The position numbers and the translations under genes are program-made. The notes under the pieces were generated by a model. The model made no database searches. It saw nothing but the letters and a program-made list of their open reading frames with translations, and was not told the origin of the DNA. This document shows, piece by piece, positions 15,888 through 57,190 of a DNA stretch of 64,000 nt. Location of the stretch: positions 1-64,000 of the IMG/VR virus record IMGVR_UViG_3300046559_001153; one strand, 5' to 3'. Numbering within the stretch: position 1 is the first letter of the stretch; each line of letters begins with the position of its first letter.

Positions 15888-17675
15888 ATGGCCGTCGACT
15901 ATCCTGTTAATCCCGTCGCCATGGATCAGGCTCCACTTGGTGGCACGAACTTTCCGTTCGTGGACACCTCGACGGGTCTGGAATTCCTCATTGCCGATCT
16001 CAACCTGACTTACTCTGACGACGCGTCTGTCTTCGCTTTACCGTTCCGACTCGACTGGCTGCACGGCTTCGGCTCGATGCCCCACTCGGCACCGAGTTTC
16101 GCGCCGACGCCTACCCACGCTCAGGATGTCTTAATCCGTGACGCCAACGAGCAGGTAGTATTCAGCTCTGCTACTGGCAGCTTCAACGTGACAGTCTGGA
16201 ATTCCAGCCTGACTGTTCTGACCTGGAAAACAGCGATGGGGGTTTTGTCGCTCGTCTGGGTTACACAATGGCCCAGCGGACCGACGGCCCCGAACTATTT
16301 CACGAATATCGCCTTCACAAACGTCAAACTTGATTTGCGTACCTGCCAGCGTCTGCCGCCGCATGTTACGGGCATCAAAATCGGCAGCACGGTCTACACA
16401 GGCCAGATTCAGCTGGCGGCCGGGTATAACATCAATCTCGAAAAGGTTGAACAAACGGGCTTTGATAGCGGTATCCAGAATGTGACGGCCCTGCAGATTG
16501 ATGCCGTTCCAGGCGCGGGCCTGGGTCAATTTTCAGACTGCACAGAGGCCAATGTCGTACTACGCAGGGTTAATGGCCAGAGCCCTGACAGCAATGGGAA
16601 TCTGCAGTTGGATCTCGCCGGCTGTTATCGATTGCAACTGGCCGGAGCCATAACGTCGACCAGCCCGCGTGTGTTCAAAACGACACTCGGAACGTTGCAA
16701 TTCAGCAACGACTGCGCCCCATGCTGCGATTGCCAGGACTACGTCAACACCTATCGAGGCCTGACGAACGTTTGGAACCAGTTCTACCAGATAGACGTGG
16801 ACGCTCACCAGGCAAGAGACCAGTTGCAGGCAAACATCGCGAGATGGGATTCACAAAAATCCTGTCGTGAGGCAACAGCGGTTCGTTTGTTAATGGTCCC
16901 GTTCTGTCCATGCCTGATCGGTGTGGTCGGATCGTACTGCAATATGACTGGGACCTGCCTGACAAATGTGACAATGACGTTCAACTTTTCCGGGCTGACC
17001 GAGCTGTCGCCGGACGTGATCTGTGGCCAGACTGTGATCAATAACGATCAGCAGTACGCATTGGCCGGGTCGTGGCCTCAGTATACGGCTTACTTCGACA
17101 ACGTCAGCGCTGGACAACGAGTTTCGGTTCAATTTGCGGTGGAGGCAAAAAACTGTCAGTCGTCTGAGCCGTTGACTGGAACACTCGGTGTTGCGTTCGG
17201 GGCGTCGTCAGCCACACCGCCGCCATCCGCCAGTCAGTCGATCTTGATGCTGGCGCCGGATGGAATCACCGGAGATTGTTGCGATCCCGGCGCAACTTTA
17301 GGGACGTCGTCTACGTCCTCCACGACGTCTAGTACTACTACGACTACCACCACTACCACGACCACAACTACCACCACTACCACGACCACAACTACCACCA
17401 CTACTACGACCACGACCACCACTACTACGACCACGACTACCACCACTACTACGACCACGACCACCACTACTACCACGACTACCACCACTACTACGACCAC
17501 CACTGGCACGTCCGGTACCGGATCGCACGTATGCCAGGCCGTCTGCTCGTGGATGTGGATGGGCGATACATGGTCCTTGCAATCTGGTTGTGAGGTCGGT
17601 TGCGGATGCGCGCCACCTGGAGCTTGTCCGGGCTGCTTTGTCGGCCAATTAGCCGGGTCGGACTGCCACAATTAA
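15888..17675 (+). CDS. Cys-rich tail-associated paralog 2 with poly-Thr stalk
   Basis: NFPF; LAAGYNI; RVNGQSPDSNGNL; CAPCCDC; 57 Thr; Cys/Trp C-terminal module. Confidence 0.65.
   Translation: MAVDYPVNPVAMDQAPLGGTNFPFVDTSTGLEFLIADLNLTYSDDASVFALPFRLDWLHGFGSMPHSAPSFAPTPTHAQDVLIRDANEQVVFSSATGSFNVTVWNSSLTVLTWKTAMGVLSLVWVTQWPSGPTAPNYFTNIAFTNVKLDLRTCQRLPPHVTGIKIGSTVYTGQIQLAAGYNINLEKVEQTGFDSGIQNVTALQIDAVPGAGLGQFSDCTEANVVLRRVNGQSPDSNGNLQLDLAGCYRLQLAGAITSTSPRVFKTTLGTLQFSNDCAPCCDCQDYVNTYRGLTNVWNQFYQIDVDAHQARDQLQANIARWDSQKSCREATAVRLLMVPFCPCLIGVVGSYCNMTGTCLTNVTMTFNFSGLTELSPDVICGQTVINNDQQYALAGSWPQYTAYFDNVSAGQRVSVQFAVEAKNCQSSEPLTGTLGVAFGASSATPPPSASQSILMLAPDGITGDCCDPGATLGTSSTSSTTSSTTTTTTTTTTTTTTTTTTTTTTTTTTTTTTTTTTTTTTTTTTTTTTTTTTTTTTTTTGTSGTGSHVCQAVCSWMWMGDTWSLQSGCEVGCGCAPPGACPGCFVGQLAGSDCHN
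17334..17504 (+). repeat. (ACN)57 tract encoding 57 consecutive threonines
   Basis: 171 nt of mixed ACT/ACC/ACG/ACA codons in frame. Confidence 0.95.
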
Positions 17676-24744: not shown

Positions 24745-26826
24745 ATGAGTCAGACCCCCAAAAGATTTTTACTGGTCCATCGACGAGCCGTCGGCGACAC
24801 GGTTGTCATGACGGGCGTGATCCGGGATTTGAAGCTGACTTACCCGTCGATCCCCATCCACGTGTATTCGAATTACCGGGATGTCTGGCTCAACAACCCG
24901 CACATCGAGAGCTTTGATCGAAACGAAGTACCGGGGGCGGAGCGACATTCTCTGTGCTACTCGCGATCCATCAACATCGCCGAGAAGGGCACGAGATTGC
25001 ATTTCCTGGGCGCCTTCCATCAGGACTTCACAGTCAAAGCCGGCGTCCCGGTTGAACTGCTGTATCCAACCCCCGACCTGCATCTGTCGCCGGACGAGCT
25101 CGTTCCGCCGCTTGACCGTCGATACTGGGTTGTTCTGGCTGGTGGCAAGTCGGACGTTACGATCAAGCATTGGGACTACAGCTGGTACCAGCAGACGGTC
25201 GACCTGTTGTCGGACTACGGGATCCCGTGCGTTCAGGCGGGCTCGGTCGAACGCGGTCACACGCATGAGCCGTTGAACGGGGTTCTCAATCTGGTCGGAC
25301 AGACCAATCTCCGGTCATTCATGCGGTTGATCTATCACGCAGACGGGGTGATATGCCCAGTCACATCGGCCATGCACATTGCCGCGGCCTTCAACCGGCC
25401 CGCGGTGGTTATCGCCGGCGGCCGGGAAGCCTGGTGGTGGGAGGCCTATCGCCGCGAGAATCAGGGCCTCGGGAAAAATCACGAACTGCTCCCCGTATCG
25501 CACGCTTACTTGCATACAATTGGTTTATTGCCCTGCTGTCAGGACAAGGGGTGTTGGCGTGCACTGGTTAATCCAATCACGCCGGAAGACTTCACGTCAA
25601 AACGAATGAAGACGATGTGTCGAGACGTCGTCAAAGAACCAGGTCGTCAGATCTTGCCACGCTGCATGGCCATGATCACCCCACAGCATGTTGTTTCCGA
25701 GGTCCTCATGTACTACGAAAAAGGCGTTCTTCCTCCGATCGGGCAGGCAAGACAACTGCCCCCCATTCCTGGAGTTGGCCATGCGATTCACCAACCGGCC
25801 CAAACGGCTGCGGCACCCCTACTTCTACCCGGTACGCTGCCGGGACAAATCTCGACTCCCAATGACACCGCACAATTACAGGCCCCGCAAATTCTGGGAC
25901 TGGCCCCGGACACGCAGGCAGGCGGAGCAGGACTTCTACGCTTAAATCCGCCGGTCGTTACGGATGCGAGACTGATCAAACCGCAACCAACGGTGTCGGC
26001 GATCCGATTGACGGTTCCTGTTCAGGCCGTACTCGAGCAAGCCGCATCAATCCTCGACCATCCGATCGTCGGTGGCAAATTTACGATCTGCACTTTGGCT
26101 TACGGTAAATTCCCCCACCTGATCAAACGGTGTATCAGCTCGATTCTGGAGTCTGTGCCGCGGAGCCGACTCGATCTACGGATTGGCGCCAACGCCTGTT
26201 GCGACGAAACGCTGGAGTACATCAATAGCCCTGAGGTGGGGGCGACCAAGGTCTACAACCACCCGGAGAACGCTTACAAGTACCCTGTAATGCACGAGAT
26301 GTTTCATGACGCTAGCTGCCCGATCCGATCGAACTATCTGGTCTGGTTCGACGACGACAGTTACGTAGTCAAAACGTCCTGGCTGACCGACCTGGCTCAG
26401 GCCATCATTGAGAACCACAATCACAAGGTGGGCATGTACGGGATCAAATTCATCCACGATATCAAGTCGTTTGCTCGAAACGGACACGATCCTCGCCAGT
26501 GGTTCCAACAGGCAACCTGGTGGAGAGGCCGTCCGTTCCAGACGTCTGGCGGCGGTGAGGCGCCCAATGCGACGGCCATCCACTTCGTCTCCGGCGGCTT
26601 CTGGGCGATCTACACGCCGCTGATCAAACAGGCTGACATTCCGGACATCCGCCTCAGAAACAACGGTGATATGCAGCTGGGGGCTGCCTGCCACCAGCAC
26701 GGTTACAAGATTCGCGATTTCAACCGGAACAAGACCCACGTATACTCATCCGGAGCGGCCAGACGCGGCGTCCAGCACAATTTCCCGTGGTCACACGAAC
26801 AGCCCTACGAACGCCTCATCAGTTGA
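24745..26826 (+). CDS. Bifunctional glycosyltransferase: GT9 (heptosyltransferase-like) plus GT-A/GT2-like
   Basis: AVGDTV, K.W, LVGQTNL..ADGVI...TSAMHIAAAF..P; Pro/Gln linker; WFDDDS DxD motif. Confidence 0.8.
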   Translation: MSQTPKRFLLVHRRAVGDTVVMTGVIRDLKLTYPSIPIHVYSNYRDVWLNNPHIESFDRNEVPGAERHSLCYSRSINIAEKGTRLHFLGAFHQDFTVKAGVPVELLYPTPDLHLSPDELVPPLDRRYWVVLAGGKSDVTIKHWDYSWYQQTVDLLSDYGIPCVQAGSVERGHTHEPLNGVLNLVGQTNLRSFMRLIYHADGVICPVTSAMHIAAAFNRPAVVIAGGREAWWWEAYRRENQGLGKNHELLPVSHAYLHTIGLLPCCQDKGCWRALVNPITPEDFTSKRMKTMCRDVVKEPGRQILPRCMAMITPQHVVSEVLMYYEKGVLPPIGQARQLPPIPGVGHAIHQPAQTAAAPLLLPGTLPGQISTPNDTAQLQAPQILGLAPDTQAGGAGLLRLNPPVVTDARLIKPQPTVSAIRLTVPVQAVLEQAASILDHPIVGGKFTICTLAYGKFPHLIKRCISSILESVPRSRLDLRIGANACCDETLEYINSPEVGATKVYNHPENAYKYPVMHEMFHDASCPIRSNYLVWFDDDSYVVKTSWLTDLAQAIIENHNHKVGMYGIKFIHDIKSFARNGHDPRQWFQQATWWRGRPFQTSGGGEAPNATAIHFVSGGFWAIYTPLIKQADIPDIRLRNNGDMQLGAACHQHGYKIRDFNRNKTHVYSSGAARRGVQHNFPWSHEQPYERLIS

Positions 26827-26844
26827 TTTTCAATTATCGCAAGG

Positions 26845-27297
26845 ATGCGAATCATGGCTCATGGAGTGAAGCTTCGCCGGTACGGGATGATAACGCCCGA
26901 CCCAACCCGCAACATTTTTCGAATCCGAATCGAAGTCATCGATTTCAGCGGTGACATCGATGGCCGAATCTTTCTGTTCAAACGCAGTCCGGTTAACCCT
27001 TACACGTCGACGTACAGCGACAATTACATGTGCGTGTGTGCTCCCGTCGATATGGCCGAGTATCCGCCCGGGGCACCAGACCCGGAGAAGCCTTATCCGT
27101 TTTTCCGATCGCACATGGTTGAAGCCGATTTGAGAAATATGGCTGACATTGAAAAATACTGGGAACTTGTCAAATCTGACGTGTGTCAGTTGATGCAATC
27201 GCTGGACCTGGCAGCTGATCTCAAGGTGATCGAAGATTTCAATTGTGGCGAATTGCCCAAGTCAGATGCGTCATCGTCCATTTCCATTAACGGGTGA
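26845..27297 (+). CDS. Hypothetical protein
   Basis: 150 aa, in-operon. Confidence 0.65.
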   Translation: MRIMAHGVKLRRYGMITPDPTRNIFRIRIEVIDFSGDIDGRIFLFKRSPVNPYTSTYSDNYMCVCAPVDMAEYPPGAPDPEKPYPFFRSHMVEADLRNMADIEKYWELVKSDVCQLMQSLDLAADLKVIEDFNCGELPKSDASSSISING

Positions 27298-27300
27298 AAG

Positions 27301-27609
27301 ATGCCTGATCGACAAACTCTGGTAGTGCTCGATGATGGACTGCTGCTTAATTTGACCAGTCGTCCGGACATCATGGCCGCCTTCTCGTTCATCGCCCAAG
27401 TCAAAACGGCCGCGGCAACTGGATCGAAATGCGGAGCCTGCGCCCGTAAAGCGGCGTCCCGTGGGAATGTTTTTTCCGCGGTTAAGCAAACGATCGCCGA
27501 GTTGCCCGACTCGGAGAAGCTGCGATTGAAGAACCTGCTTAACACTGAGCGGCTCCGACTTCGTTACAGTCGCAGGCAGGACGGCCGGATGGTCGAACTG
27601 ACCTTCTAA
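27301..27609 (+). CDS. Small CxxC protein
   Basis: KCGAC; last gene of late block. Confidence 0.65.
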   Translation: MPDRQTLVVLDDGLLLNLTSRPDIMAAFSFIAQVKTAAATGSKCGACARKAASRGNVFSAVKQTIAELPDSEKLRLKNLLNTERLRLRYSRRQDGRMVELTF

Positions 27610-27649
27610 GCTGCAGCTAAATTAGACCCCGATTCCTGGCATATTACTT

Positions 27650-27812
27650 GGAGCGGCTCGTTAGCTTGCGAAAGCAATCTGACGGTTCTTCTCTAGGTGA
27701 TCCAGATTAAGACCCATCGGCCCGATTCGACTGATCTGGGTCACCTTCGTTCTGCTCACGAGGCATTGTCTGATCGTCCCCTGGCCGGGTAGTCAGACAA
27801 TGCCGGCGTGAG
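27650..27812 (+). ncRNA. Candidate structured RNA/leader with three hairpins
   Basis: Stems 27659-27684 (GAAA tetraloop), 27695-27746 (15 bp, two G.U), 27755-27812; non-coding gap. Confidence 0.55.
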
Positions 27813-27813
27813 T

Positions 27814-27831
27814 TTAACTTTTTAATAAGGT
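27814..27831. promoter_or_regulatory. Palindrome copy 3 (TTAACTTTTTAATAAGGT)
   Basis: Exact reverse complement of 12498-12515. Confidence 0.55.
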
Positions 27832-27843
27832 ACGGGAGACACC

Positions 27844-28272
27844 ATGCGACAAGTCTTGCTAACGGTCGTCGCTACGACCATTGCTCTTATCGGGATTCTT
27901 TTGTTCATGGTGCTTTGCTTGGTGGAGTTCGTTTTGAAAGTCAGTCTTGATTTGTTGAATGCGGGCGAAGACCGCCTGTATGAGTTGGTTGCAAAACTTT
28001 CGGGAATTTTTCGAGCGGTCGGCCAGGCCGGGAAAACTCCCACTCATGCGTCAGAGAACACGACGCGACATGGAGGTGATGATGCTTGTTTTAAGTCGAA
28101 AGGCCAGCGAGGAAATTCGATTGACGGACACGCAAACGGGCCAAACGATTGTGCTCATGGTCGTACAAATCAGAGCAGGGAAAGTTCGACTGGGGATTCA
28201 AGCCCCGCAGACGGTAGTAGTGACACGGGGCGAGTTGTTGAAAAACCGACAGTCGGTGGATCAAGTCGTTGA
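27844..28272 (+). CDS. Putative membrane protein overlapping csrA out of frame
   Basis: GGGAG SD; strongly hydrophobic first 30 aa; C-terminal half overlaps csrA. Confidence 0.4.
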   Translation: MRQVLLTVVATTIALIGILLFMVLCLVEFVLKVSLDLLNAGEDRLYELVAKLSGIFRAVGQAGKTPTHASENTTRHGGDDACFKSKGQRGNSIDGHANGPNDCAHGRTNQSRESSTGDSSPADGSSDTGRVVEKPTVGGSSR

Positions 28273-28288
28273 ACAAAACGCCTCTTAA
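28082..28288 (+). CDS. csrA: CsrA/RsmA translational regulator
   Basis: MLVLSRK..E.I...I.L.VV.I..GKVRLGI.AP..V.V.R.EL; GGAGGT SD. Confidence 0.9.
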   Translation: MLVLSRKASEEIRLTDTQTGQTIVLMVVQIRAGKVRLGIQAPQTVVVTRGELLKNRQSVDQVVEQNAS

Positions 28289-28339
28289 CCAGACCAGACT
28301 GGGCCAGCTAAAAAATAACGCCGGTAACCCGGCAAAAAT

Positions 28340-28458
28340 GACCTCCCTTGGCCCACTGTGGCTGATGGGGATTATTGTGAACGGTTGTTGTTCATCCTTT
28401 GGGATGGCGACACCTGTTCCCCGTAATCCCCATCAGCCGCAGTGGGTTAAGGGTTGTC
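28340..28458 (+). ncRNA. Long rod-like RNA hairpin
   Basis: 31-bp arm 28345-28375 pairs with 28423-28453, all four non-WC pairs G.U; inner stems continue to a short loop. Confidence 0.6.
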
Positions 28459-28504
28459 TCACCTCGGGCAAACTGTGTTGCCTTTTACCTATTAGGTATT
28501 ACGC

Positions 28505-28867
28505 ATGTTGAAGAGAATTTTTGTGGAGATCCTCGTCGAGGTGCCCCCAAGTGATCCAGGCTTCGTACCTGAATTGGAAGTTTATGTAGCCAATACTCGA
28601 ACCGAGTTGGCACATCGGGCACATCCAACGCTGACGTCGTTAATCCAGTACGTGATCACGCATCTCAACGGCTCCCCCTGTCAGTGCTGCCGCAGCGACT
28701 ATCTGAGCGCACCGATCCCCGGCATCCGGGCCCGAATCGAGGGCGGACGCGTTGCCGAGCACGCGAAGGTCGAACGATGCGACAAATGCGAGTGTTTCAG
28801 AAGCGATGCGGCTGCTGAAGTGGCTCTGAATCTCTACATGGCCCATCAGGACTTTTACGCGTTATGA
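28505..28867 (+). CDS. Hypothetical Cys-containing protein
   Basis: CQCC and VERCDKC. Confidence 0.6.
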   Translation: MLKRIFVEILVEVPPSDPGFVPELEVYVANTRTELAHRAHPTLTSLIQYVITHLNGSPCQCCRSDYLSAPIPGIRARIEGGRVAEHAKVERCDKCECFRSDAAAEVALNLYMAHQDFYAL

Positions 28868-28937
28868 ACTGGTTGTCCTGGCTCTGATTTGATAATCTGA
28901 TTTCGTGGGCCCCACTCGTAACGAAAGAGAATCGATC

Positions 28938-29237
28938 ATGAATTTGAAAGTCGTGTCCGTCGACAAGGAAGCCGGTGTCGTGACTGTGGAAGCTGAGACC
29001 TTCGCTCCGGCCGATTTCCCGGTCGCCATCGAATCGCTCAAAGAAGGTCTGCGAGTTCCCAACATGGCCATCGAAGCGGCCAAGGCCGCTGGAATCAGTA
29101 ACCCGACGATTGTCTCCAGATCACGACATCCCTACCCGTATTTCGGTGAAGGGGTTGATCAGGACGAACTGGCCAAGAGCAGCGCCGAACCGATCTCTTA
29201 CAGGATTGACGTTCCCATCTCGAGCTTCTCGATGTAG
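28938..29237 (+). CDS. Hypothetical protein
   Basis: ATG 28938 after purine-rich tract. Confidence 0.6.
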   Translation: MNLKVVSVDKEAGVVTVEAETFAPADFPVAIESLKEGLRVPNMAIEAAKAAGISNPTIVSRSRHPYPYFGEGVDQDELAKSSAEPISYRIDVPISSFSM

Positions 29238-29241
29238 TCAA

Positions 29242-29979
29242 ATGCCGACGATCGACCGACCACAACAACGTGGCCCGCTAATGCAGCGAGCCATTCAGCG
29301 TTCGACCAGCGACCCAATCGGGAAGCTGTTGCTCGACCCTGAGGCATTCGCCACGTCCTTGTTGATCGTTCTGGTTGATCACTACGGCCAAGAGGCCTTA
29401 CGCTGGGCCCCTCAAACGATTCGAATGCACCTCGAGGAAGATTTCCAGGTAAGCATTCTTCCGCTGAATTTTGACAAGTTAATGGCTGCCATTACAATCG
29501 TGACGACTGACTTCTATTTTCGAGATCTGTCACGATTCATCATTCTGACGAATGCTCTGTGCGGTGACGGCTTCTCATTTACCGAGTTCGATAAAGCTGA
29601 CGTCCACGAGTGTGCCTGGGGCATTGTCGAGGCCTGGATGTTGAATCCGCCAGACAGCCAGCAGCCGTTTGATACGGCTATCCGGCACTACTTGTCCGTT
29701 CTGCTTCAACACGACGGTTACGTCGTGCCGCCAGGCATGCTGAGAATGGCCATAGACGGCGACCGGACCGCTGGTGTAATGAGGAACTTCGGACACGATC
29801 CGCAGATGCTGGCTACGATCAACGCTGTGCAGTCCGATAAGACCCGTGAGGTCGACGACATGGTGCAGCGCAATCTACAGGAGTTACTGGCTCAGATAAA
29901 GGACCTGCCGTTAAAGACAGGTAATTCCAAAAACATCGCTGAGACGCTTGTCAACGAGCTCAAGAAAATCAGAGCATGA
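29242..29979 (+). CDS. Helical phage hypothetical protein
   Basis: D.YG.EAL.W.P.T, NAL, CAWGI.E motifs; start 29242 or 29281. Confidence 0.65.
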   Translation: MPTIDRPQQRGPLMQRAIQRSTSDPIGKLLLDPEAFATSLLIVLVDHYGQEALRWAPQTIRMHLEEDFQVSILPLNFDKLMAAITIVTTDFYFRDLSRFIILTNALCGDGFSFTEFDKADVHECAWGIVEAWMLNPPDSQQPFDTAIRHYLSVLLQHDGYVVPPGMLRMAIDGDRTAGVMRNFGHDPQMLATINAVQSDKTREVDDMVQRNLQELLAQIKDLPLKTGNSKNIAETLVNELKKIRA

Positions 29980-30143
29980 AAAACTTCGTCCTGTACAATT
30001 TTTCAACCCGTGTGTTAGTTTCACGTCACGTCTATGCCCAACACGACAAGGCTCAATGCGACGCCGACCAGTGGAACGACGTGATAGTGCTGGCTATCGA
30101 AGTCCCCAACGATTGCGTTGAGGACTCCGAAGAAGAAGACTAA
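29976..30143 (+). CDS. 55-aa hypothetical protein (not in ORF track)
   Basis: ATGA overlap; acidic tail. Confidence 0.5.
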   Translation: MKNFVLYNFSTRVLVSRHVYAQHDKAQCDADQWNDVIVLAIEVPNDCVEDSEEED

Positions 30144-30172
30144 TTCGAAACCCCAAACCAGGAGAATCAGGA

Positions 30173-30586
30173 ATGTCCCACATTGTGACCCTCAAGACCC
30201 TCAAGACCCAGATCACCAACATCGACGCGCTCGATACGGCATGCAACAAACTCGATCTCAGGCTGAACCGCGGCCAGAAGTCTTTCAAGTCGTTCGGCAG
30301 CGTCCGTCCGGCCTGCGAACACGCCATCTCCATGGCACAGCCGCAACAGGGTGACTACGAGATCGGCCTCGTCCAGGACGGCGACGCGTTCACGTTGAAG
30401 TACGACTTCTACAATCAGCACAATCGTCTGGAGAAAGCGGTTGGCGCCAACTGTGACCTGCTCACCCAGCGGTACGCGGTTGAAGTCGCCCGCGCCGAAG
30501 CTCAGGCCAAAGGCTTTGAGTGCTTCGAAACGGTCGAGCAGGACGAGTCGATCACGCTTCAGGTCTGCGTTGGCGCCGGTGCTTAA
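30173..30586 (+). CDS. DUF1257 / Ycf35-like protein
   Basis: MSHIVT..TQI....AL..AC, YEIG, D.Y, L.QRYA.E.AR.EA..KG. Confidence 0.75.
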   Translation: MSHIVTLKTLKTQITNIDALDTACNKLDLRLNRGQKSFKSFGSVRPACEHAISMAQPQQGDYEIGLVQDGDAFTLKYDFYNQHNRLEKAVGANCDLLTQRYAVEVARAEAQAKGFECFETVEQDESITLQVCVGAGA

Positions 30587-30888
30587 TGCTCGTCAAACGC
30601 ATTGATGTACAGCAAAAACACATCGATTGCGGGGAACCAGACTCAGCCACGTCATGCCCAGTCGCCTGGGCGGTGGCTGAAGCTTTTGGGTTCGACCCGG
30701 CATCCCTCGACTGCGAAGTGTATGTTGAGGGCAGCGATATCCAAGTAGACACCCCGGGGCTAGCCCGTCGCGGGATAATCTCGCAGCAGGTCTCCGATTT
30801 TGTCAATCGCTTCGATGACCGACTCGACGTTGCGCCATTCTCGTTCGATTTCGAATACGAAGAAAATGTACTGATATCGGACGACTAA
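30586..30888 (+). CDS. Hypothetical protein
   Basis: I.V.Q.HI..G....CPVA.A...FV.RFD..V.PFSF. Confidence 0.65.
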   Translation: MLVKRIDVQQKHIDCGEPDSATSCPVAWAVAEAFGFDPASLDCEVYVEGSDIQVDTPGLARRGIISQQVSDFVNRFDDRLDVAPFSFDFEYEENVLISDD

Positions 30889-30914
30889 TCTCAAATCACT
30901 CGAAAGGAAGTCAA

Positions 30915-31100
30915 ATGCAATTCGTAAACATCAACATCAAGAAGGGCGGAAGTGTCACGATCGACGCTGTCGGCTTTACAGGCACGTCCTGCAAAGCGGC
31001 GACCGCCGCGTTCGAACAGGCCCTGGGGACCATCCAGGTCGACCAGGATAAGCCAGAACTCTTCGAGACCCTCTCCACCGACACGAACGTTTCCAACTAA
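30915..31100 (+). CDS. DUF2997 family protein
   Basis: I...G.V.I...GF.G.SC..AT..FE.ALG......KPE. Confidence 0.8.
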   Translation: MQFVNINIKKGGSVTIDAVGFTGTSCKAATAAFEQALGTIQVDQDKPELFETLSTDTNVSN

Positions 31101-31117
31101 TCCGCGAAAAGGACACT

Positions 31118-32731
31118 ATGGCCGTTTCGAGCACTGAAGAAGTCGTTTCTACAAGTCCCCTGCAACATCAACTGGAGGATTACATCAAGGCCGGGTTCAC
31201 TGGAATCTGGATCAACACGTATGAGCATCTGAACGTTATCGAAGAGATTTGCGATCTGCGAAAGCAATACGGCTGGAATGTGGCCGTATGGGACAGTGAC
31301 CTGGGAATCCGCCTGGCCACCGACAAAGGAGTTATCCCCGTAAAGGAGATCACCTCGGGTGTCCCAGACCAGTTGCGGACGGTCTCCACCCCGGGATCGG
31401 CCGCCACGCTGGCTCGAACCTGGTATGACGAGGAGTTCGATCCAGACGACACAAGCCCTGACCGACGACCGCCTACACCACATGTCGTGGTGTTACGCAA
31501 TTTTCACGGCTATGCCAGCGCCACAGCACAGATACTGCAGAATACTGTCGAAATGTGCCGACGGTTGTGTTCGTTCACGATCATTCTCAGCGCGTTGCAG
31601 AGGATCCCGGCCGAACTTGAAAAGGACTTCGTGGTCATCGCCTACGATCTCCCGAACAAGGATGAGCTGAAGAAAATCGCCGGCAACCTGCTGAAAGACG
31701 ACGAGCAGGAGATGCTGGACGAACCGGAGACTGACAAGGCCGTTGAGGCTGCACGCGGTCTGACCCGCATTGAAGCCGAAAACGCGTTCAGTCTGTCGCT
31801 CGTCCAGACAGGATCAAAACGCCTCGAGTACCGATCGGTCTGGCAGCAGAAAAAACAGATGGTCTCGAAGAGCGGTCTGCTCAACTTTTACGAGGGCCAG
31901 GAACAGCTGACTGATCTGGGCGGTTTGGCGTCGCTCAAGAATTTCTGCCTGAAGGCCCTGCTGCACAAACCGGATGCTGTGGCCAAACCCCGCGGTATCC
32001 TGCTGATCGGACCGGCCGGTACAGGCAAATCGGCAATCGCTAAGGCTCTTGGAAATGCGGTCGGACGTCCGACGATCTCCCTGGACCTCGGATCGCTGAT
32101 GGGCAGTCTGGTTGGACAGACTGAATCCCAGACGCGTCAAGCCCTGCAGATTATCGACGCGTGCAGTCCGGCGATCCTCATGGTCGAAGAAGTCGAGAAG
32201 GCCCTGGCTGGCACCCGCTCGTCGGGACAAACGGACGGCGGCATTATGGCTCGCATGTTCGGCATGCTGCTCGCGTGGCTTAACGACCACGAGTCAGACG
32301 TCTTCTGCGTGATGACCTGTAACGGGGCTGAAAGCCTGCCGCCAGAGTTCACACGCGCTGAACGTTTTGATGCGACCTTCTTCCTGGATCTGCCCACGAA
32401 GAAGGAGAAAGCGGCCATCTGGCCGATGTACATCAAGCACTTCCGACTGACCGACAAACAAACAGCACAAATGCCAATGGACGAAGACTGGACTGGAGCC
32501 GAGATCCGCTCGTGCTGTCGTTTGTCTTCGCTATTGGACATTTCGCTGGTCGAGTCGGCCAACAATGTGCGGCCGGTTGCCGTGACTGCCAAGGAGTCGC
32601 TGGACTCGCTGAGAACGTGGGCATCGGCCCGTTGCCTGAGTGCCTCTTATCCCGGTCCGTACGCCAAAGACAAGAAGTCACCGTCATCGGGGACTGGCGG
32701 ACGCCAGATCCTGAAGAGCGAGAATAACTAG
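31118..32731 (+). CDS. Ycf46-like AAA+ ATPase
   Basis: Degenerate N-terminal AAA (IP.ELEK, GLT..EAE); Walker A GPAGTGKS, Walker B variant MVEEVEKAL, LPPEF.R.ERFD, WTGAEI. Confidence 0.85.
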   Translation: MAVSSTEEVVSTSPLQHQLEDYIKAGFTGIWINTYEHLNVIEEICDLRKQYGWNVAVWDSDLGIRLATDKGVIPVKEITSGVPDQLRTVSTPGSAATLARTWYDEEFDPDDTSPDRRPPTPHVVVLRNFHGYASATAQILQNTVEMCRRLCSFTIILSALQRIPAELEKDFVVIAYDLPNKDELKKIAGNLLKDDEQEMLDEPETDKAVEAARGLTRIEAENAFSLSLVQTGSKRLEYRSVWQQKKQMVSKSGLLNFYEGQEQLTDLGGLASLKNFCLKALLHKPDAVAKPRGILLIGPAGTGKSAIAKALGNAVGRPTISLDLGSLMGSLVGQTESQTRQALQIIDACSPAILMVEEVEKALAGTRSSGQTDGGIMARMFGMLLAWLNDHESDVFCVMTCNGAESLPPEFTRAERFDATFFLDLPTKKEKAAIWPMYIKHFRLTDKQTAQMPMDEDWTGAEIRSCCRLSSLLDISLVESANNVRPVAVTAKESLDSLRTWASARCLSASYPGPYAKDKKSPSSGTGGRQILKSENN

Positions 32732-32790
32732 CCCATTTTGGGGAAGTATATATACTCCCCAAAACGAGGGTAAAAACTACGGTCCTGTTC

Positions 32791-32830
32791 GAGCCCCGCT
32801 GGTCATGATGGCCGGCGGGGTTTTATTTTT
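32791..32830 (+). terminator. Intrinsic terminator
   Basis: CCCCGCTGGTCA/TGGCCGGCGGGG stem then TTTTATTTTT. Confidence 0.75.
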
Positions 32831-32839
32831 GGAGCTTTC

Positions 32840-33184
32840 ATGCAAGCAAGTCGAGAATTGCAGAGTCTTCAGCGGAGTCTGGATAACGGGACAATTCCGC
32901 CCAATGAGCCTATGTTCTGTCTCAGGGCCAGCGACCGCTTTGCCGCGGCCTTGGTCCGCTTGTGGGTAGGTATGGCGATCGCGGCGGAGACTCCGATCTG
33001 GATGACAGACAACGCACTGGCCCTGGCTGATGAAATGGAGAGATGGCCGATCAGGCGAACACCCGGACGTCCGGACACACAAATTGATAATTCACCCGCA
33101 TTCACAGGAGAAGAGAATGTTAGCCAATCTGGAGCATCAACGAATCGCAGGCAAGCTCGCCGACGGCGATCTGCCACCCGGTGA
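32840..33184 (+). CDS. EP.F.LRA.DRFAA-domain protein, paralog A
   Basis: GGAG SD; shares about 60-aa domain with next gene. Confidence 0.65.
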   Translation: MQASRELQSLQRSLDNGTIPPNEPMFCLRASDRFAAALVRLWVGMAIAAETPIWMTDNALALADEMERWPIRRTPGRPDTQIDNSPAFTGEENVSQSGASTNRRQARRRRSATR

Positions 33185-33590
33185 GCCGTTGTTCACGCTG
33201 CGAGCCAGAGATAGATTCGCGGCACAAGTTGTTCGACACTGGTGTGATCTGGCTGAAGCCGGTGGATCCCCGCATGAAAAGATCGACGAGGCGAGACTTC
33301 TGGCCAACGACATGGATCGATGGCCAATCAAGCAGATCCCCGGCAGACACGATACACGTCGAGATGACGGCATGGCCGCCCGCGAGAGGGCCTTCCGTGA
33401 CCAGCTTGCGACGAATCGCGAAGAGACCATCCGCGAGCTCATGGCCATCAAGGTCGACGAATGGCTTGAATCAGAGGGCACGTCAGAAGTGGCGCGTGTC
33501 CTATCCAACTGGCTCATCGACGGACTGGATTTCCGAAACGACGACACGATCGTCGAAATGGCCCACGGCCGCTTGTGGGGCATCGAATGA
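33117..33590 (+). CDS. EP.F.LRA.DRFAA-domain protein, paralog B
   Basis: AGGAG SD before ATG 33117. Confidence 0.65.
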   Translation: MLANLEHQRIAGKLADGDLPPGEPLFTLRARDRFAAQVVRHWCDLAEAGGSPHEKIDEARLLANDMDRWPIKQIPGRHDTRRDDGMAARERAFRDQLATNREETIRELMAIKVDEWLESEGTSEVARVLSNWLIDGLDFRNDDTIVEMAHGRLWGIE

Positions 33591-34051
33591 AAATTTCTCG
33601 TGGCGCCGCACTTGATCGCTATTACTTGCTCAAGCTGTTTGGCTTCGGAATTTTTCTTCACCGAATTCATCACTCGGATCCTGGGGCTGTATACCTTGTG
33701 CCTCGATCGGGTGATGTAGCTCTGTATCACAGCCACCCGTGGAGTGGTTTGAGTCTCATTCTCGGCAGTTACGTGGAAATCCGGTACGGAGAGAATCCTA
33801 AACGACGTTGGTTATGGAACTGGATAAACGCCAAAGTGCATCATCGTGTTCTCATAGCTAAACCAGTTTGGACTCTGTTCATCCACCTGCCAAAGTCGAA
33901 TCGCTGGTCAGTCATTAACGAAAACGGCTGCGTGTTATCAGAGGAACCCTGGAAAGGTGATAAAGGGTTCAAAGATTATTCTGCATCAACCAATCTGTCT
34001 CACTCTCAAGAAGGAAACCATGCCTGCAACCATGTCCCCTCCCAAAAATAA
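33587..34051 (+). CDS. Cupin-like protein
   Basis: LH.I..SD, H.HPW, G.Y.E, HRV, WTLF. Confidence 0.65.
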   Translation: MKISRGAALDRYYLLKLFGFGIFLHRIHHSDPGAVYLVPRSGDVALYHSHPWSGLSLILGSYVEIRYGENPKRRWLWNWINAKVHHRVLIAKPVWTLFIHLPKSNRWSVINENGCVLSEEPWKGDKGFKDYSASTNLSHSQEGNHACNHVPSQK

Positions 34052-35078
34052 GCGAGCGACGAAAACCGAAGAACTTCCCAATCAGCTGCACTTGCCTCTG
34101 GACGGCAAAGCCGATCTTTCCCCGGCCACCCAAATCCGAAGCGTATCGAGAGCCTTCCGCATCACGTTCAACGACATCGGCGGTAAGCGTCAACTTGACG
34201 ACAGTCAGAAGCTGCAGGTGTCGTCTGGATTTGACGCGAACATGGATCGCCTCGACTTGAGCAAGAAGCTCGTCAACGCCAAACACCCGGCCATCAAAAA
34301 GAAGAACGCAGCCAAATCGGAAATCCTGGCCTGCTTCAAATCAAGAACGCTACCCTACCCGGAAGCGGGCATCCGTCTGCTGCCGATACGATCTAAGGCG
34401 AGCGAAGAACAGTTGGCCGAGGTCGACTCGTTCACGACGCGTATCCGCGAACTGATCGAGAACTACTATTCAGCTGTGGCCGATCTACAGAATGAGTGGA
34501 CCAGCGTGGTCAACCAGGCCCGCAACGAACTGGGGACCCTGTTCAACGCGAACGACTACCCGACCAACGTGGTGGACCTGTTGACCTGCCACTTCGAACC
34601 GGTCAACGTTGAGTTGCCTGATTATTACAAGCATGTGTCGCCGGCAGAGTACAAGGCGGCCTGTGATCAGCTCAATCGCAAGTTCGAGGAAGCGGCTGAG
34701 ATGCAACGCGAGTTCGTTGCCAAGATGCTCAGCAACTCGGTCGAGCAGTTGGTCAAGTCGGTTACCGGTTTCCGAAAGGGCGAACAACGCTCGTTCCAGA
34801 ATTCGGTGGTAACCAACCTATTTGCCGCGTTCGACGAGTTCCGCGAGAAGACCAAGGTGTACGGAATTGGGGGTCGTGAGCTCGAGGATACAGTCGAACG
34901 GATTCGTGCTCTGCTGACCACCGACTCACGATCAAACAAGCTGCGTGCAGTTGACGTGCCGGATGAACTGCGTCGCGACGAGCAGTTCAGCAACCGGGTA
35001 ACGTCCGGCCTGCAAGAGCTGACCTCGCACCTGGCAACGCAGACCAGATCCCGCAGAACCCGTTTCCTCATGCGCTGA
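34020..35078 (+). CDS. DUF3150-like protein
   Basis: SKKL...HP, TLPYPE.GIRL, LG.LFN..DYP, F..S.V.NL..F..F. Confidence 0.6.
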   Translation: MPATMSPPKNKRATKTEELPNQLHLPLDGKADLSPATQIRSVSRAFRITFNDIGGKRQLDDSQKLQVSSGFDANMDRLDLSKKLVNAKHPAIKKKNAAKSEILACFKSRTLPYPEAGIRLLPIRSKASEEQLAEVDSFTTRIRELIENYYSAVADLQNEWTSVVNQARNELGTLFNANDYPTNVVDLLTCHFEPVNVELPDYYKHVSPAEYKAACDQLNRKFEEAAEMQREFVAKMLSNSVEQLVKSVTGFRKGEQRSFQNSVVTNLFAAFDEFREKTKVYGIGGRELEDTVERIRALLTTDSRSNKLRAVDVPDELRRDEQFSNRVTSGLQELTSHLATQTRSRRTRFLMR

Positions 35079-45051: not shown

Positions 45052-45572
45052 ACCTGCGTAACTGGCTCAACACGTTGGTCCGCCGCATCAAGGTGGCTGT
45101 GTTCGGCCGTCAAAATTTGCCGGTCGTTGAGCCAGAATCACGTACCTACGACCAGATCGAGGCCGCACTAGCTTTCGACACTAGGGTCCTACAAGAGTAC
45201 ACTGACGCGCGATATCGACAACTAGCCCACCTGCGAGGACTCCGCGACTCTCGGACGGTTGTATTTCCGGGACATGAGGTGATCATTAACGGAATCGATT
45301 GGTCGGCCACAGGCCACCAGACGATGCAAGCACGCTGGGAAGCCATGGCCGCTCGCGAGTTGCAGACTAGTGAAGACAGCCGGCTTATTGAGCAGTTGCC
45401 GGCTTCCAAGCAAACTGACACCAAAATTACGCCTCCCCATCCCACTCCCAAACGAGCGGTTCACTGGGTTCCAGGTAAGCCTCGAGTTCTCCTTCGAGAG
45501 CGTACTTCTGCGAGTTCGCCAGATTCGGCCAGCGACCCTGGCTGTGCCACAGAGCCACGCAGCCCATGTTGA
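45048..45572 (+). CDS. Tag protein 5 (..WVPGKPRVLLR plus extension), overlapping terL 3' end
   Basis: TTGA coupling; 146-bp convergent overlap with terL. Confidence 0.55.
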   Translation: MNLRNWLNTLVRRIKVAVFGRQNLPVVEPESRTYDQIEAALAFDTRVLQEYTDARYRQLAHLRGLRDSRTVVFPGHEVIINGIDWSATGHQTMQARWEAMAARELQTSEDSRLIEQLPASKQTDTKITPPHPTPKRAVHWVPGKPRVLLRERTSASSPDSASDPGCATEPRSPC

Positions 45573-47280
45573 CGGCCTGGGCGAAGTCGTCGGGGTGCAT
45601 GGGGTTCTTGCCGATCGTGTAGGCTTCTTTTCCGAATCGTGTCGGAATCTTCTCTTCGACGAGCGACAGGAAGTCGTTCATCAGGCCTTCATGATCCTTG
45701 TCCAGGTAGTCGTACTGGAAGAACCGGATCTCGCAGTTCTTGATCTGTTGGCACGTCAGCAAGAGGCTGCGAGCCTTGTCGACCTGCCAGTGCTCCTTGG
45801 GGTGCTTCTCAGTCGCCAGCTTGAAGGTGAGGATATTCGCAAAGGCTGCACGAACGTAGGCGACCGGCATGATCCTCGACTGGGGCATACCTGTATGCAG
45901 CAGGAATGTTTCACGTAACGACCCGGCGCCCGTGTAGTCATGCACAAGAGCGTCGCACTTGAAGACGCGGAAGAATCTGGCAGCCATCTGAGCTTCGACA
46001 ACGTGTTCAGACGGGTTCAACGATCGATGCCCGTAGATCACGTCAATCTTTCCGTCCGGCAGCATGCCCATGACGGCAAAGGTTGTGAAGCTCTGGAACC
46101 TCTCACCTACGGCACCCCAGTCAACAGACAGGATGACCTTGATGTAGTCCCCTCGAGGAACCATTTCGGCCTGCTCAAACGTATTGCGGTGCGGGAGACT
46201 GGCCGCTCGTTTGAGGTCCGTTCGTGTGACCAGCTTGGTTCCCGTATCGGAGCTCTCGCCCAGGATTTCGTTGTGGAAGATGGCTTGGGTCATGTTGCCA
46301 GCGCCAGCCTGTCTGGCCAGTAGTTCGGCCCATTTTTCCCGGCTTGCATAGTGGGCCGGGAAAATAATCTGCGGCATGTGGTACCCGGCCATCGTTTGCC
46401 GTTTGTCAGCCACCTGGTGGATCCACCAGCCGTTTCTCGGATCGACTGGCTTGCGACATTTGGCACAGATGGTGCCCGGCCGCCTTGGACCGATGTCTGG
46501 GTGCCACGGTCCGAGCATCTTCTCCAGGTCGTGTGTCAGCGCGGGCACGTTGTCGTAATGGCATGCGTCGCACGGTACGATCCATTCGGCCATGCTGGAC
46601 GACGACCAGAGACCCTCGAGCGTGTTATCGAGAGTCAACGGAGTTCCGGTGTACAGCTCCCAGCCCCAGCGCGAGTAGGCCATAACCTGGGTGATCACAC
46701 CGATCAACGAACTGTCCAGGTTTTGAACTTCGTCAAAATTGATCTCGTCGCCCGACACGCCGCGGATACGATTCGCGTCACGAAAGGCAAAACTGAAAAT
46801 CATCATCGATTTGTTGCGGAATGTTTTCTGCAGCACGCTGCCGTTGCTCTTGCTGTTGACGAACAGCGTTCGCACGGGCGAATCGTTGATGAACGGCTCG
46901 ACGTAGTTTGTCGAGAACCGGCGAATCTGCTCGAACAGGGGAGTAACTGTGAGCAGCTTGAAATGCTTAATCGCATTGCACCGAGCCAGACCGATCGCGG
47001 CCAGACTGGTCGATTTTGAGATCTGGCGACCCGCCTTAACGACGGTCACTTTTGGTGAATGCGTTTTGAATAACGGCTCGAACGGAAAATGGTCATCGAG
47101 CGAATAAGGTTTTCCGTTCAGTGTGAACAAACTCGACAGAATCGGCCGCAACGTAGGGATATGCGTCTGTTCGAAAAATCGCAATTCCTTTTTGAGCTTC
47201 GCGAGCTCACGTTTAGAAAGCGGTGGTTTCTTTCTCGGCCCCTCATCCTTTTCAGGAGACAAAATTGCGTCCAAATCCAT
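45427..47280 (-). CDS. terL: Terminase large subunit (lambda gpA-like)
   Basis: KAGRQISKST, RIRG, FDEVQ, GTP, CxxC pairs, GYH..Q, NEILGE, nuclease SVDWG and DDFAQA. Confidence 0.85.
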   Translation of the reverse strand: MDLDAILSPEKDEGPRKKPPLSKRELAKLKKELRFFEQTHIPTLRPILSSLFTLNGKPYSLDDHFPFEPLFKTHSPKVTVVKAGRQISKSTSLAAIGLARCNAIKHFKLLTVTPLFEQIRRFSTNYVEPFINDSPVRTLFVNSKSNGSVLQKTFRNKSMMIFSFAFRDANRIRGVSGDEINFDEVQNLDSSLIGVITQVMAYSRWGWELYTGTPLTLDNTLEGLWSSSSMAEWIVPCDACHYDNVPALTHDLEKMLGPWHPDIGPRRPGTICAKCRKPVDPRNGWWIHQVADKRQTMAGYHMPQIIFPAHYASREKWAELLARQAGAGNMTQAIFHNEILGESSDTGTKLVTRTDLKRAASLPHRNTFEQAEMVPRGDYIKVILSVDWGAVGERFQSFTTFAVMGMLPDGKIDVIYGHRSLNPSEHVVEAQMAARFFRVFKCDALVHDYTGAGSLRETFLLHTGMPQSRIMPVAYVRAAFANILTFKLATEKHPKEHWQVDKARSLLLTCQQIKNCEIRFFQYDYLDKDHEGLMNDFLSLVEEKIPTRFGKEAYTIGKNPMHPDDFAQAVNMGCVALWHSQGRWPNLANSQKYALEGELEAYLEPSEPLVWEWDGEA

Positions 47281-48517: not shown

Positions 48518-48884
48518 TCAACCACAAGTCTTCTACGACGCCGCGGCCGCTACTCTTCACGACGCGGGGATGGAAGTGATTAAAAATCATCCCGAGGTCC
48601 GCAGCCTGGTCGTCGTTTTCGATTACAACAAGGATCTCAACGACGCAAGGATCCCGCATGCCATTTGGATTGGCGGCGGTCCCGACGGTCAGTTGACAAC
48701 GCCCGAGGCCATTCTTGGATCTGGTTACCAGTTGCTGAAAATGTTGAGGGCTGTCGCAGTTCGTGCCGAGGAAGTCCTGCGACTTCGCGAGAAGCAGATC
48801 GTCGATGCATCCAAGCGGTTACTCGAACTGGAGAAACAGATTGCCGACAAACAAACCGAAGGGCCTGCGACGGGAGCCCCTTGA
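48501..48884 (+). CDS. Hypothetical protein with C-terminal coiled coil
   Basis: AAGGA SD, GTG start; PEVRS..VVFDY. Confidence 0.65.
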   Translation: MDQTPDQPQVFYDAAAATLHDAGMEVIKNHPEVRSLVVVFDYNKDLNDARIPHAIWIGGGPDGQLTTPEAILGSGYQLLKMLRAVAVRAEEVLRLREKQIVDASKRLLELEKQIADKQTEGPATGAP

Positions 48885-48891
48885 GGACGTC

Positions 48892-49413: not shown

Positions 49414-49422
49414 AAGGACAAC

Positions 49423-49827: not shown

Positions 49828-49930
49828 CCTGGGCCTGTTGGTCTGGTTTCGTAGTGGGCCTGGTTTAAGAGGGCTCGTCCGCCCGCTGACAAGCGGGGCG
49901 GCGACGCCCGCATTAAATCTTTACGAAGTA

Positions 49931-50145: not shown

Positions 50146-50217
50146 GAACCCCCTTTTAAGGCTGAAAACAATGGATTTAGCCGAGGTAATCCACTGAAAT
50201 CCGACAAACCCGGAAAA

Positions 50218-51087: not shown

Positions 51088-51099
51088 TTGGGAGAAAAA

Positions 51100-53834: not shown

Positions 53835-53843
53835 GAACAGGCG

Positions 53844-57188: not shown

Positions 57189-57190
57189 CC

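What the first reader, a model, noticed from the sequence alone, without database searches (positions are those of the whole stretch)
27620..27831. Three-hairpin structured RNA at the late-to-accessory switch
Seen: 230-nt non-coding gap with a promoter-like TGGCATATTACT, a GAAA-capped stem, a 15-bp stem and a 13+6-bp stem. Most non-WC positions are G.U on the + strand, there are no U-tails directly after the first two stems, and palindrome copy 3 follows the third. Inference: an sRNA or regulatory leader, and a candidate ligand for CsrA, the Nop-like protein or the RAMP-like protein.
Basis: partly seen in the sequence, partly recalled or inferred. Interest (0 to 1): 0.6.

Follow-up and report, generated by a model that had tools for sequence, protein, structure and literature searches.

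The report
Hairpin cluster ending a phage tail operon
The three hairpins are real and look like plus-strand RNA structures, but they most likely mark the end of the tail-gene transcript before a small csrA gene cassette; no related sequences exist to test this further.

Summary
The window is bases 1-64000 of a 224-kb uncultured jumbo phage, probably of Planctomycetota. The 234-nt gap 27610-27843 has no coding potential. It folds far better than shuffles on the + strand (z -4.45) than on the - strand (z -2.9). All three stems exist as described. Five G.U pairs sit in stems on the + strand and no A.C positions.

The promoter-like TGGCA...TTGG is a chance-level single match. No Rfam family matches. 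GGA motifs are not enriched and none lies in a loop, so this is not a Csr-type sponge. Hairpin 3 plus UUUAACUUUUU is the fourth-best terminator-like site on the + strand. No alternative helix competes with it. The 15-bp stem competes with an equally stable alternative pairing.

Best reading: the structured 3' end and terminator of the tail-module transcript. An 18-bp palindrome, found 8 times in the window, then precedes the ribosome-binding site of a small-ORF-csrA cassette. A separate or 3'-UTR-derived sRNA cannot be excluded.

Covariation cannot be tested. The phage is a singleton, and 8 contigs from other samples are identical across 27301-28600 (one is shorter).

The more striking object lies outside the finding: a 119-nt near-perfect hairpin after csrA (z -11).

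The parts
27301..27609 (+). Last gene before the gap: a 102-aa orphan ORF at the end of the tail/glycosyltransferase block
   Evidence: ORF list. Coding score is positive in frame. The only database relative is itself.
27610..27843 (+). Non-coding structured gap (IGR1)
   Evidence: No coding potential in 6 frames. Folds at -90.3 kcal/mol, z -4.45 on +, against z -2.9 on -. No Rfam match.
27636..27705 (+). Alternative long stem: 27636-27653 pairs with 27691-27705 (11+4 bp), enclosing H1 and excluding H2.
   Evidence: MFE helices and prefix folds.
27659..27684 (+). H1: 6+4-bp stem with a GAAA tetraloop and 1 G.U
27695..27746 (+). H2: 15-bp uninterrupted stem with 2 G.U. The 22-nt apical part holds the second copy of AGACCC...CGATTC.
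27754..27813 (+). H3: 7+13-bp GC-rich stem-loop, -37.4 kcal/mol; probable intrinsic-terminator hairpin
   Evidence: Terminator score d=+6.4, fourth on the + strand of the window.
27813..27823 (+). U-rich tract TTTAACTTTTT directly after H3; the - strand has no such tract after H3
27815..27832 (.). Copy 3 of the 18-bp AT-rich palindrome (consensus TAACTTTT-YR-AAAAGTTA); probable DNA site for a dimeric regulator at gene junctions
   Evidence: 8 sites in the window against 0.01 expected. Flanks.
27834..27839 (+). Shine-Dalgarno GGGAGA of ORF 27844
   Evidence: Sequence
27844..28272 (+). ORF 27844. The first ~78 codons code for a hydrophobic small protein; the rest runs out of frame across csrA with no coding signal.
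28079..28288 (+). Phage csrA (69 aa)
   Evidence: Pfam CsrA 1.1e-15, phrog_9500, PDB CsrA/RsmE
28340..28458 (+). 119-nt near-perfect hairpin closing the csrA cassette; 52 pairs, of which 7 are G.U
   Evidence: Fold -116.8 kcal/mol, z -11.1. Most structured spot of the window. 9 G.T-type against 0 A.C positions.

Best explanation
IGR1 is an RNA-level boundary element read on the + strand. It is the structured 3' end of the long tail-module transcript.

H3 and the following U-rich tract act as an intrinsic terminator, probably a leaky one. H1 and H2 (or the alternative long stem plus a shorter hairpin) are 3'-UTR stem-loops that block 3' exonucleases or serve as double-strand RNase sites. They do not decide termination.

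Directly after H3, the recurrent 18-bp palindrome and a strong Shine-Dalgarno sequence open a two-gene cassette: a small hydrophobic ORF plus csrA. The cassette has lower G+C and is closed on its other side by the giant hairpin, so it resembles a phage 'moron' with its own boundaries.

Shown: the structures, their strand bias, the lack of coding potential, the terminator-like score, the cassette layout. Inferred: that termination, stabilisation or processing actually happens.
For: - Upstream genes are tightly packed + strand tail/baseplate genes (phrog_6 baseplate wedge, glycosyltransferase). Downstream genes are accessory and host-like: csrA, DUF1257, and an AAA ATPase about 48% identical to Planctomycetota proteins.
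- The gap is non-coding.
- The + strand folds better than the - strand, with 5 G.U in stems and no A.C.
- H3 plus its tail scores d=+6.4. It is one of only four + strand sites with d>0 in 64 kb. The other three are textbook terminators at 20785, 32794 and 47790, so this phage does use hairpin-plus-U termination.
- The U-rich tail exists only on the + strand.
- No helix competes with H3: forbidding it costs 26 kcal/mol and leaves only 4-5-bp fragments.
- G+C drops to 0.52 over 27.0-28.5 kb, against 0.55-0.58 around it.
- The cassette is bounded downstream by the strongest hairpin of the window.
Against: - The terminator score is modest. Shuffled windows give a site with d>6 about 0.4 times per 64 kb.
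- The U-tract is interrupted (UUUAACUUUUU), and its T-run belongs to a palindrome that occurs 8 more times (7 in the window, 1 elsewhere on the contig) with no strong hairpin directly before it, so the tail may be coincidental.
- H1 and H2 have no demonstrated role.
- If H3 terminated efficiently, ORF 27844 and csrA would need a promoter within 30 nt, and none is recognisable.
- There is no transcript data and no homologue to test conservation.
Confidence: 0.42

Rival explanations
1. A stand-alone or 3'-UTR-derived small RNA of about 175 nt (roughly 27650-27825). H1 and H2 form its body and H3 plus the U-tract is its own terminator. It acts in trans on phage or host mRNAs or proteins.
For: - Hairpin body plus terminal hairpin with a U-tail is the usual sRNA layout.
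- TGG-CATATT at 27637-27645 can be read as an extended -10 (my reading of the sequence). The transcript would then start at the base of H1, which removes the competitor of H2.
- AGACCC...CGATTC occurs twice, both times in predicted unpaired stretches, and nowhere else in the window (0.1 expected).
Against: - The promoter scan found no match in the gap. A weak extended -10 is common by chance, and the sigma-54-like pattern is at chance level.
- No Rfam family matches.
- The repeated motif was found post hoc.
- No conservation data.
Confidence: 0.17
2. A cis-regulatory 5' leader of the ORF 27844-csrA cassette. Read-through from the tail operon is gated by H3 as a conditional terminator, or translation is gated by pairing with the ribosome-binding site. 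The bistable first half is the sensor, and CsrA is a possible autoregulator.
For: - Two isoenergetic folds of the first half (-90.3 against -89.4).
- The MFE pairs CCCG 27628-27631 with CGGG 27833-27836, which lies in the Shine-Dalgarno region.
- The Shine-Dalgarno sequences of ORF 27844 (GGGAGA) and of csrA (AUGGAGG) contain GGA.
- The phage CsrA keeps the conserved N-terminal MLxLxRK and the arginine aligned with that of the RsmE 'VHREE' motif.
Against: - No antiterminator helix can compete with H3, and the bistability does not touch H3.
- The pairing with the Shine-Dalgarno region is only 4 bp.
- There are only 2 GGA in the gap, 185 nt apart and both paired.
- Eight other phage csrA loci have no structured flanks.
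- No riboswitch or leader family matches.
Confidence: 0.15
3. Intercistronic processing sites for a double-strand-specific RNase, like the RNase III sites of T7. The hairpins, and the giant hairpin after csrA, are cut out of a long polycistronic transcript, leaving stable 3' hairpins and setting the relative stability of the tail, csrA and downstream messages.
For: - H3 (7+13 bp with an internal bulge) and the giant hairpin (52 pairs) are long enough to be RNase III substrates.
- They are strand-specific, lie between + strand genes and mostly lack U-tails.
Against: - H1 (10 bp) and H2 (15 bp) are short for RNase III.
- Nothing is known of the host enzyme's rules.
- This overlaps with the best explanation rather than excluding it.
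Confidence: 0.12
4. A DNA-level element: single-strand hairpins used in replication initiation, recombination or packaging. G.T pairs are also tolerated in single-stranded DNA.
For: - Cumulative GC skew has its broad minimum at 26.5-34.5 kb, with a local minimum at about 27 kb, although all genes stay on the + strand.
- The strand-specific wobble bias would also fit single-stranded DNA.
Against: - The skew change is gradual and coincides with a change of gene module.
- No iterons or attC-type core sites.
- The hairpins are single-copy.
- The terminase gene lies far away, at 45.4-47.3 kb.
Confidence: 0.06
5. No selected function: a leftover of the insertion of the csrA cassette that happens to fold.
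For: Orphan sequence with no conservation data. G and T are slightly enriched on the + strand here, which by itself favours G.T over A.C.
Against: 0 of 200 shuffles fold as well. Two of the best stems of 64 kb lie side by side. The largest gap in an otherwise tightly packed block is kept unchanged in the contigs from at least 7 other samples that were read.
Confidence: 0.08

Closest known systems
Intrinsic (Rho-independent) terminators, including tandem or non-canonical hairpin clusters at operon ends
   Same: A GC-rich stem-loop directly after the last gene of a long operon, followed by a U-rich stretch on the coding strand only. The same phage has three textbook examples.
   Different: The U-tract is broken by AAC and shared with a recurrent palindrome. 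The stem is unusually long (20 bp, 60 nt). Two more hairpins without U-tails precede it. The score is only just positive.
Phage T7 intercistronic RNase III sites (R1.1 type) and lambda sib retroregulation
   Same: Strand-specific hairpins between genes of one long phage transcript. Bipartite stems with an internal bulge (H3). A very long duplex just downstream of a regulatory gene (the giant hairpin after csrA).
   Different: No sequence similarity and no evidence of cleavage. The host is probably a planctomycete whose RNase III specificity is unknown.
CsrB/CsrC/RsmX/Y/Z sRNAs that sequester CsrA
   Same: Multi-hairpin non-coding RNA next to a csrA gene.
   Different: These sRNAs carry many GGA motifs in loops. 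IGR1 has 2 GGA (3.3 expected), both paired, and IGR2 has 2, both inside the stem. No Rfam hit.
Phage 'morons': independent gene cassettes with their own boundaries, inserted between late genes
   Same: A small accessory cassette of lower G+C lies between the tail module and the next block. It is bounded by a terminator-like hairpin upstream and strong structure downstream.
   Different: No recognisable promoter, and it is not shown to be transcribed independently.

Membership tests
Intrinsic terminator | Stable GC-rich stem-loop downstream of a stop codon, on the coding strand | tested here: met
   H3 27754-27813, -37.4 kcal/mol, z -5.7; it starts 145 nt after the stop at 27609.
Intrinsic terminator | Uninterrupted U-tract immediately after the stem | tested here: inconclusive
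   The tail is UUUAACUUUUU: 8 U in 11, but broken by AAC. The combined score is d=+6.4, fourth in the window, while shuffles reach d>6 about 0.4 times per window.
Intrinsic terminator | Transcripts end there | not testable with these tools
   No transcript data.
CsrA-sequestering sRNA (CsrB/RsmZ type) | Multiple GGA motifs exposed in hairpin loops | tested here: not met
   2 GGA against 3.3 expected, unpaired probability mostly below 0.3, none in a loop.
CsrA-sequestering sRNA (CsrB/RsmZ type) | Match to an Rfam Csr/Rsm model | tested here: not met
   No family at gathering score in the window, and none at E<=10 in 27400-28700 apart from generic hairpin noise.
Transcription attenuator / riboswitch leader | An alternative helix mutually exclusive with the terminator hairpin | tested here: not met
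   With the 3' arm of H3 blocked, only 4-5-bp fragments form (-59.2 against -85.5 kcal/mol). The bistable part (27636-27746) does not involve H3.
Sigma-54 promoter | GG at -24 and GC at -12 with fixed spacing | tested here: not met
   TGGCA-N6-TTGG has GG where GC is required. The relaxed pattern gives 1 match against 1.45 expected, and there is no second copy within 3 mismatches.
RNase III processing site (T7 type) | About two turns of duplex RNA, often with an internal loop, inside a polycistronic transcript | tested here: inconclusive
   H3 (7+13 bp) and the giant hairpin qualify by length. H1 and H2 are shorter. Cleavage cannot be tested.
Conserved structured RNA (any) | Covariation among homologues | not testable with these tools
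   No homologue exists in IMG/VR, the metagenome contigs, GTDB genomes, GenBank phages or the 5.8-billion-protein set. 8 contigs are identical.
Integron attC (considered for the giant hairpin) | RYYYAAC and GTTRRRY core sites at the base of the hairpin | tested here: not met
   Neither core site occurs in 28280-28510.

The most novel reading that the evidence does not exclude
IGR1 and the giant hairpin after csrA are two halves of a phage-specific RNA control module around a phage-borne CsrA. This would be either a new, GGA-poor structured RNA partner or decoy, possibly using the twice-repeated AGACCC...CGAUUC motif in unpaired regions. Alternatively, it would be a double-strand-RNase gate that times CsrA production, so that a jumbo phage can take over post-transcriptional control in a planctomycete host.
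Probability: 0.1. Interest if true: 0.6.

Novelty: new member of a known kind. Interest (0 to 1): 0.3.

Why it matters
If the best reading holds, this is ordinary phage transcript architecture: a terminator and 3'-UTR hairpins at a module boundary. It is useful mainly for annotating transcription units in an uncultured 224-kb planctomycete phage. The wider context is more interesting. A phage-borne csrA sits in its own small cassette between two strongly strand-biased RNA structures. An 18-bp palindrome marks many gene junctions. Both could give a handle on gene regulation in a phage-host system about which almost nothing is known.

Tried and rejected
- **Rfam:** nothing at gathering score over the whole window. 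At E<=10 over 27400-28700 there were only generic miRNA-precursor hits on the giant hairpin.
- **tRNA/tmRNA:** none.
- **Homologue hunts for covariation:**
  - The 102-aa protein matched only itself.
  - csrA matched itself plus one 55% hit, and eight 42-55% phage loci without synteny.
  - The glycosyltransferase gave nothing in viral or metagenome contigs.
  - The AAA ATPase matched only ~48% planctomycete chromosomal relatives.
  - Exact H3 and H2 patterns gave no hit in genome contigs, and the H3 pattern gave none in metagenome contigs.
  - blastn against GenBank phages gave no match.
  - 8 contigs from other samples carry an identical IGR1, so there is no microdiversity either.
- **Palindrome as a tag for relatives:** only this contig holds it more than once.
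- **Giant hairpin as a multi-copy MITE:** single copy in IMG/VR.
- **attC cores:** absent.
- **Sigma-54 promoter:** chance level.
- **Csr sponge:** rejected on GGA counts.
- **Attenuator:** no competing helix for H3.
- **Hidden small protein in the gap:** ORFs of 20-32 aa with no Shine-Dalgarno sequence and negative coding score.
- **'Phage csrA genes generally have structured flanks':** not so in 8 other loci.
- **Complementarity between the H2 loop and the giant-hairpin arm (10 bp):** by my own rough estimate, at chance level for a 1-kb region.
- **Literature searches on phage CsrA and planctomycete jumbo phages:** nothing directly relevant.

Full report
**Source and setting.** The window is bases 1-64000 of IMGVR_UViG_3300046559_001153, a 224,270-bp viral contig, and window and contig coordinates coincide.
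- Nearly all long ORFs are on the + strand.
- Upstream of the finding lies a tightly packed block. It holds a baseplate-wedge homologue (phrog_6), large proteins with no family match and a two-domain glycosyltransferase.
- Downstream come csrA (Pfam CsrA 1.1e-15; phrog_9500; PDB CsrA/RsmE), DUF1257 and an AAA ATPase. The best relatives of the ATPase (about 48% identity) are chromosomal proteins of Pirellulaceae, Isosphaeraceae and Phycisphaeraceae.
- The host is therefore probably a planctomycete, and 'late-to-accessory switch' is a fair description.

The gap is 27610-27843 (234 nt).
- It has no coding potential in any of six frames, whereas the flanking ORFs score positive in their own frames.
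- The + strand folds at -90.3 kcal/mol (z -4.45; 0 of 200 shuffles as good). The - strand gives -78.9 (z -2.9).
- H1 (27659-27684, GAAA loop) gives -13.2 on + against -7.3 on -.
- H2 (27695-27746, 15 uninterrupted bp) gives -24.2 against -21.5.
- H3 (27754-27813, 7+13 bp) gives -37.4 against -34.8.
- Among uninterrupted stems of 13 bp or more with few wobble pairs, H2 and H3 are two of a handful in 64 kb, and they lie side by side.
- The stems hold five G.U pairs on the + strand and no A.C position that would be G.U on the - strand.

**Two qualifications.**
- The 'promoter-like' TGGCATATTACTTGG is real, but as a sigma-54-type pattern it has GG where GC is required. It is a single match against 1.45 expected, and no similar copy exists in the window. 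The sigma-70 scan found nothing in the gap.
- That same sequence is the 5' arm of an alternative 11+4-bp stem (27636-27653 with 27691-27705). This stem encloses H1 and excludes H2. The two folds are isoenergetic (-90.3 against -89.4), and the alternative forms first in prefix folds.

**Hairpin 3 looks like a terminator.**
- I scored every + strand position with a hairpin-plus-T-tail function of the d'Aubenton-Carafa type. Only four sites have d>0.
- Three are textbook terminators, at 20785, 32794 and 47790 (d 30-47). The fourth is H3 with its tail, at d +6.4.
- The tail (UUUAACUUUUU) exists only on the + strand.
- The score is not compelling alone: block shuffles give d>6 about 0.4 times per window. 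In addition, the T-run belongs to the palindrome motif, which elsewhere has no strong hairpin directly before it.
- No helix can compete with H3. Blocking its 3' arm leaves only 4-5-bp fragments and costs 26 kcal/mol. An attenuator or riboswitch reading therefore lacks its defining feature.

**No support for a CsrA ligand.**
- IGR1 has 2 GGA against 3.3 expected, both paired. One of them lies in the Shine-Dalgarno sequence of ORF 27844. IGR2 has 2, both buried in the stem.
- Rfam finds nothing, at gathering score or at E<=10.
- Eight other phage csrA loci have unremarkable flanks.
- Pfam scans of about 40 ORFs of the window found no Nop or RAMP family.

**The cassette.**
- ORF 27844 has a strong Shine-Dalgarno sequence, and a positive coding score for its first 234 nt.
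- From 28078 the coding signal moves to the csrA frame, although ORF 27844 stays open to 28272.
- G+C falls to about 0.52 over 27.0-28.5 kb.
- After csrA comes the most structured spot of the window, a 119-nt hairpin at 28340-28458. The region folds at -116.8 kcal/mol, z -11.1. The hairpin has 52 pairs, with 9 G.T-type positions and no A.C.
- Taking both gaps together, 14 wobble positions favour the + strand and none the - strand. Allowing for the local G+T excess, I estimate the chance probability at about 4e-4.
- The layout therefore reads: terminator-like H3, palindrome, Shine-Dalgarno, small ORF, csrA, giant hairpin. This resembles a moron-type cassette.

**The palindrome.**
- TAACTTTT-YR-AAAAGTTA occurs 8 times in the window (0.01 expected) and at least once more on the contig, at 183656.
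- It sits in minimal spacers. In five of the eight window copies its outer TAA or TAG is the stop codon of the + strand gene before it, and in most copies a Shine-Dalgarno sequence or start codon follows within about 2-20 nt.
- Deviations in the two half-sites are not compensatory (for example A3 opposite G16 in three copies). This argues for a DNA site for a dimeric protein rather than an RNA hairpin (my reading).
- In two copies the ATG follows within 2-4 nt, so it is unlikely to be a -10-type promoter element.

**Comparative evidence is unavailable.**
- The 102-aa protein and csrA have no relatives beyond themselves and one 55% hit.
- The glycosyltransferase has none in viral or metagenome contigs.
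- Exact H2 and H3 patterns are absent from GTDB genomes, and the H3 pattern is absent from the metagenome collection.
- GenBank phages give no match.
- Eight contigs from other samples are identical over the parts of 27301-28600 they cover, apart from one SNP at 28520.

**Verdict.** The structures are real and act on the + strand, probably as RNA.
- The most likely role (about 0.4) is the structured 3' end and leaky terminator of the tail-module transcript, at the border of a csrA cassette.
- A separate or 3'-UTR-derived sRNA (about 0.17), a cis leader (about 0.15) and RNase III-type processing (about 0.12, partly overlapping the best reading) remain open.
- The CsrA-sponge and sigma-54 ideas fail their defining tests.
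- Interest is modest. The giant hairpin and the palindrome family are the better leads.

Noticed in passing
window 28340-28458 (gap 28289-28504): A 119-nt near-perfect hairpin lies directly after csrA: 52 pairs, of which 7 are G.U. The region folds at -116.8 kcal/mol, z -11.1, by far the most structured spot in 64 kb. It has 9 G.T-type and 0 A.C opposing positions, so it is selected on the + strand. It is single-copy in IMG/VR, has no attC cores, and gets only generic miRNA-precursor noise in Rfam.
   Followed up: partly
window 28319-28334, - strand: The best terminator-like site on the - strand of the whole window is here (GC-rich 6-bp stem, tail UUAUUUUUUA, d 13.9, above all 12 shuffles). 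On the - strand it lies just 'after' the giant hairpin, although all nearby genes are on the + strand. It could insulate csrA from antisense transcription or end a - strand RNA. Unexplained.
   Followed up: partly
window 3521, 12497, 27815, 37209, 38630, 49809, 55992, 63084; contig 183656 (L038): An 18-bp AT-rich palindrome, TAACTTTT-YR-AAAAGTTA, occurs at gene junctions (8 copies against 0.01 expected). It often supplies the upstream stop codon and lies 2-20 nt before the next Shine-Dalgarno sequence or start codon. Half-site changes are not compensatory, which suggests a DNA site for a dimeric regulator. No other viral contig carries it more than once.
   Followed up: partly
window 27844-28272 and 28079-28288: ORF 27844 (hydrophobic N-terminus, good coding score for 78 codons) stays open for 65 more codons across the whole of csrA in another frame, with no coding signal there. 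Gene callers disagree here (142-aa ORF, 62-aa - strand ORF, or nothing).
   Followed up: partly
window 27624-27635 and 27710-27728: AGACCC-N(0-8)-CGATTC occurs twice, only in IGR1 (0.1 expected in the window). One copy is in the unpaired 5' stretch and one in the apical part of H2. Found post hoc.
   Followed up: partly
window 30173-32731: A DUF1257 protein and a 537-aa AAA ATPase lie a little apart here, with a 100-aa ORF between them. The ATPase is about 48% identical to thousands of Planctomycetota chromosomal proteins (some sources label relatives 'SpoVK/Ycf46/Vps4 family'). It points to the host phylum.
   Followed up: partly
window 17293-17538: Degenerate tandem repeat with period 9/12/15 nt (ACC/ACT/ACG-rich, so a Thr-rich tract) inside the 595-aa ORF 15888-17675 of the structural block.
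   Followed up: no
window 56041-56083 and 49829-49920: Two more palindrome copies are followed by strong hairpins. One is a perfect 14-bp stem at 56041-56083 that spans the predicted start of ORF 56051. The other is a GC-rich hairpin pair at 49829-49920.
   Followed up: partly
window 26500-34500: Cumulative GC skew has a broad minimum here (local minima near 27 kb and 31.5 kb), although gene orientation does not change. This may reflect a module boundary or lie near a replication origin.
   Followed up: partly
window 48763-61969: Replication/recombination block: RNase H-like, cytidylyltransferase-like, Metallophos (SbcD-like), a 716-aa SMC/Rad50-like ATPase, and a helicase (ResIII + Helicase_C). 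A terminase large subunit (GpA_ATPase) is on the - strand at 45427-47280.
   Followed up: no
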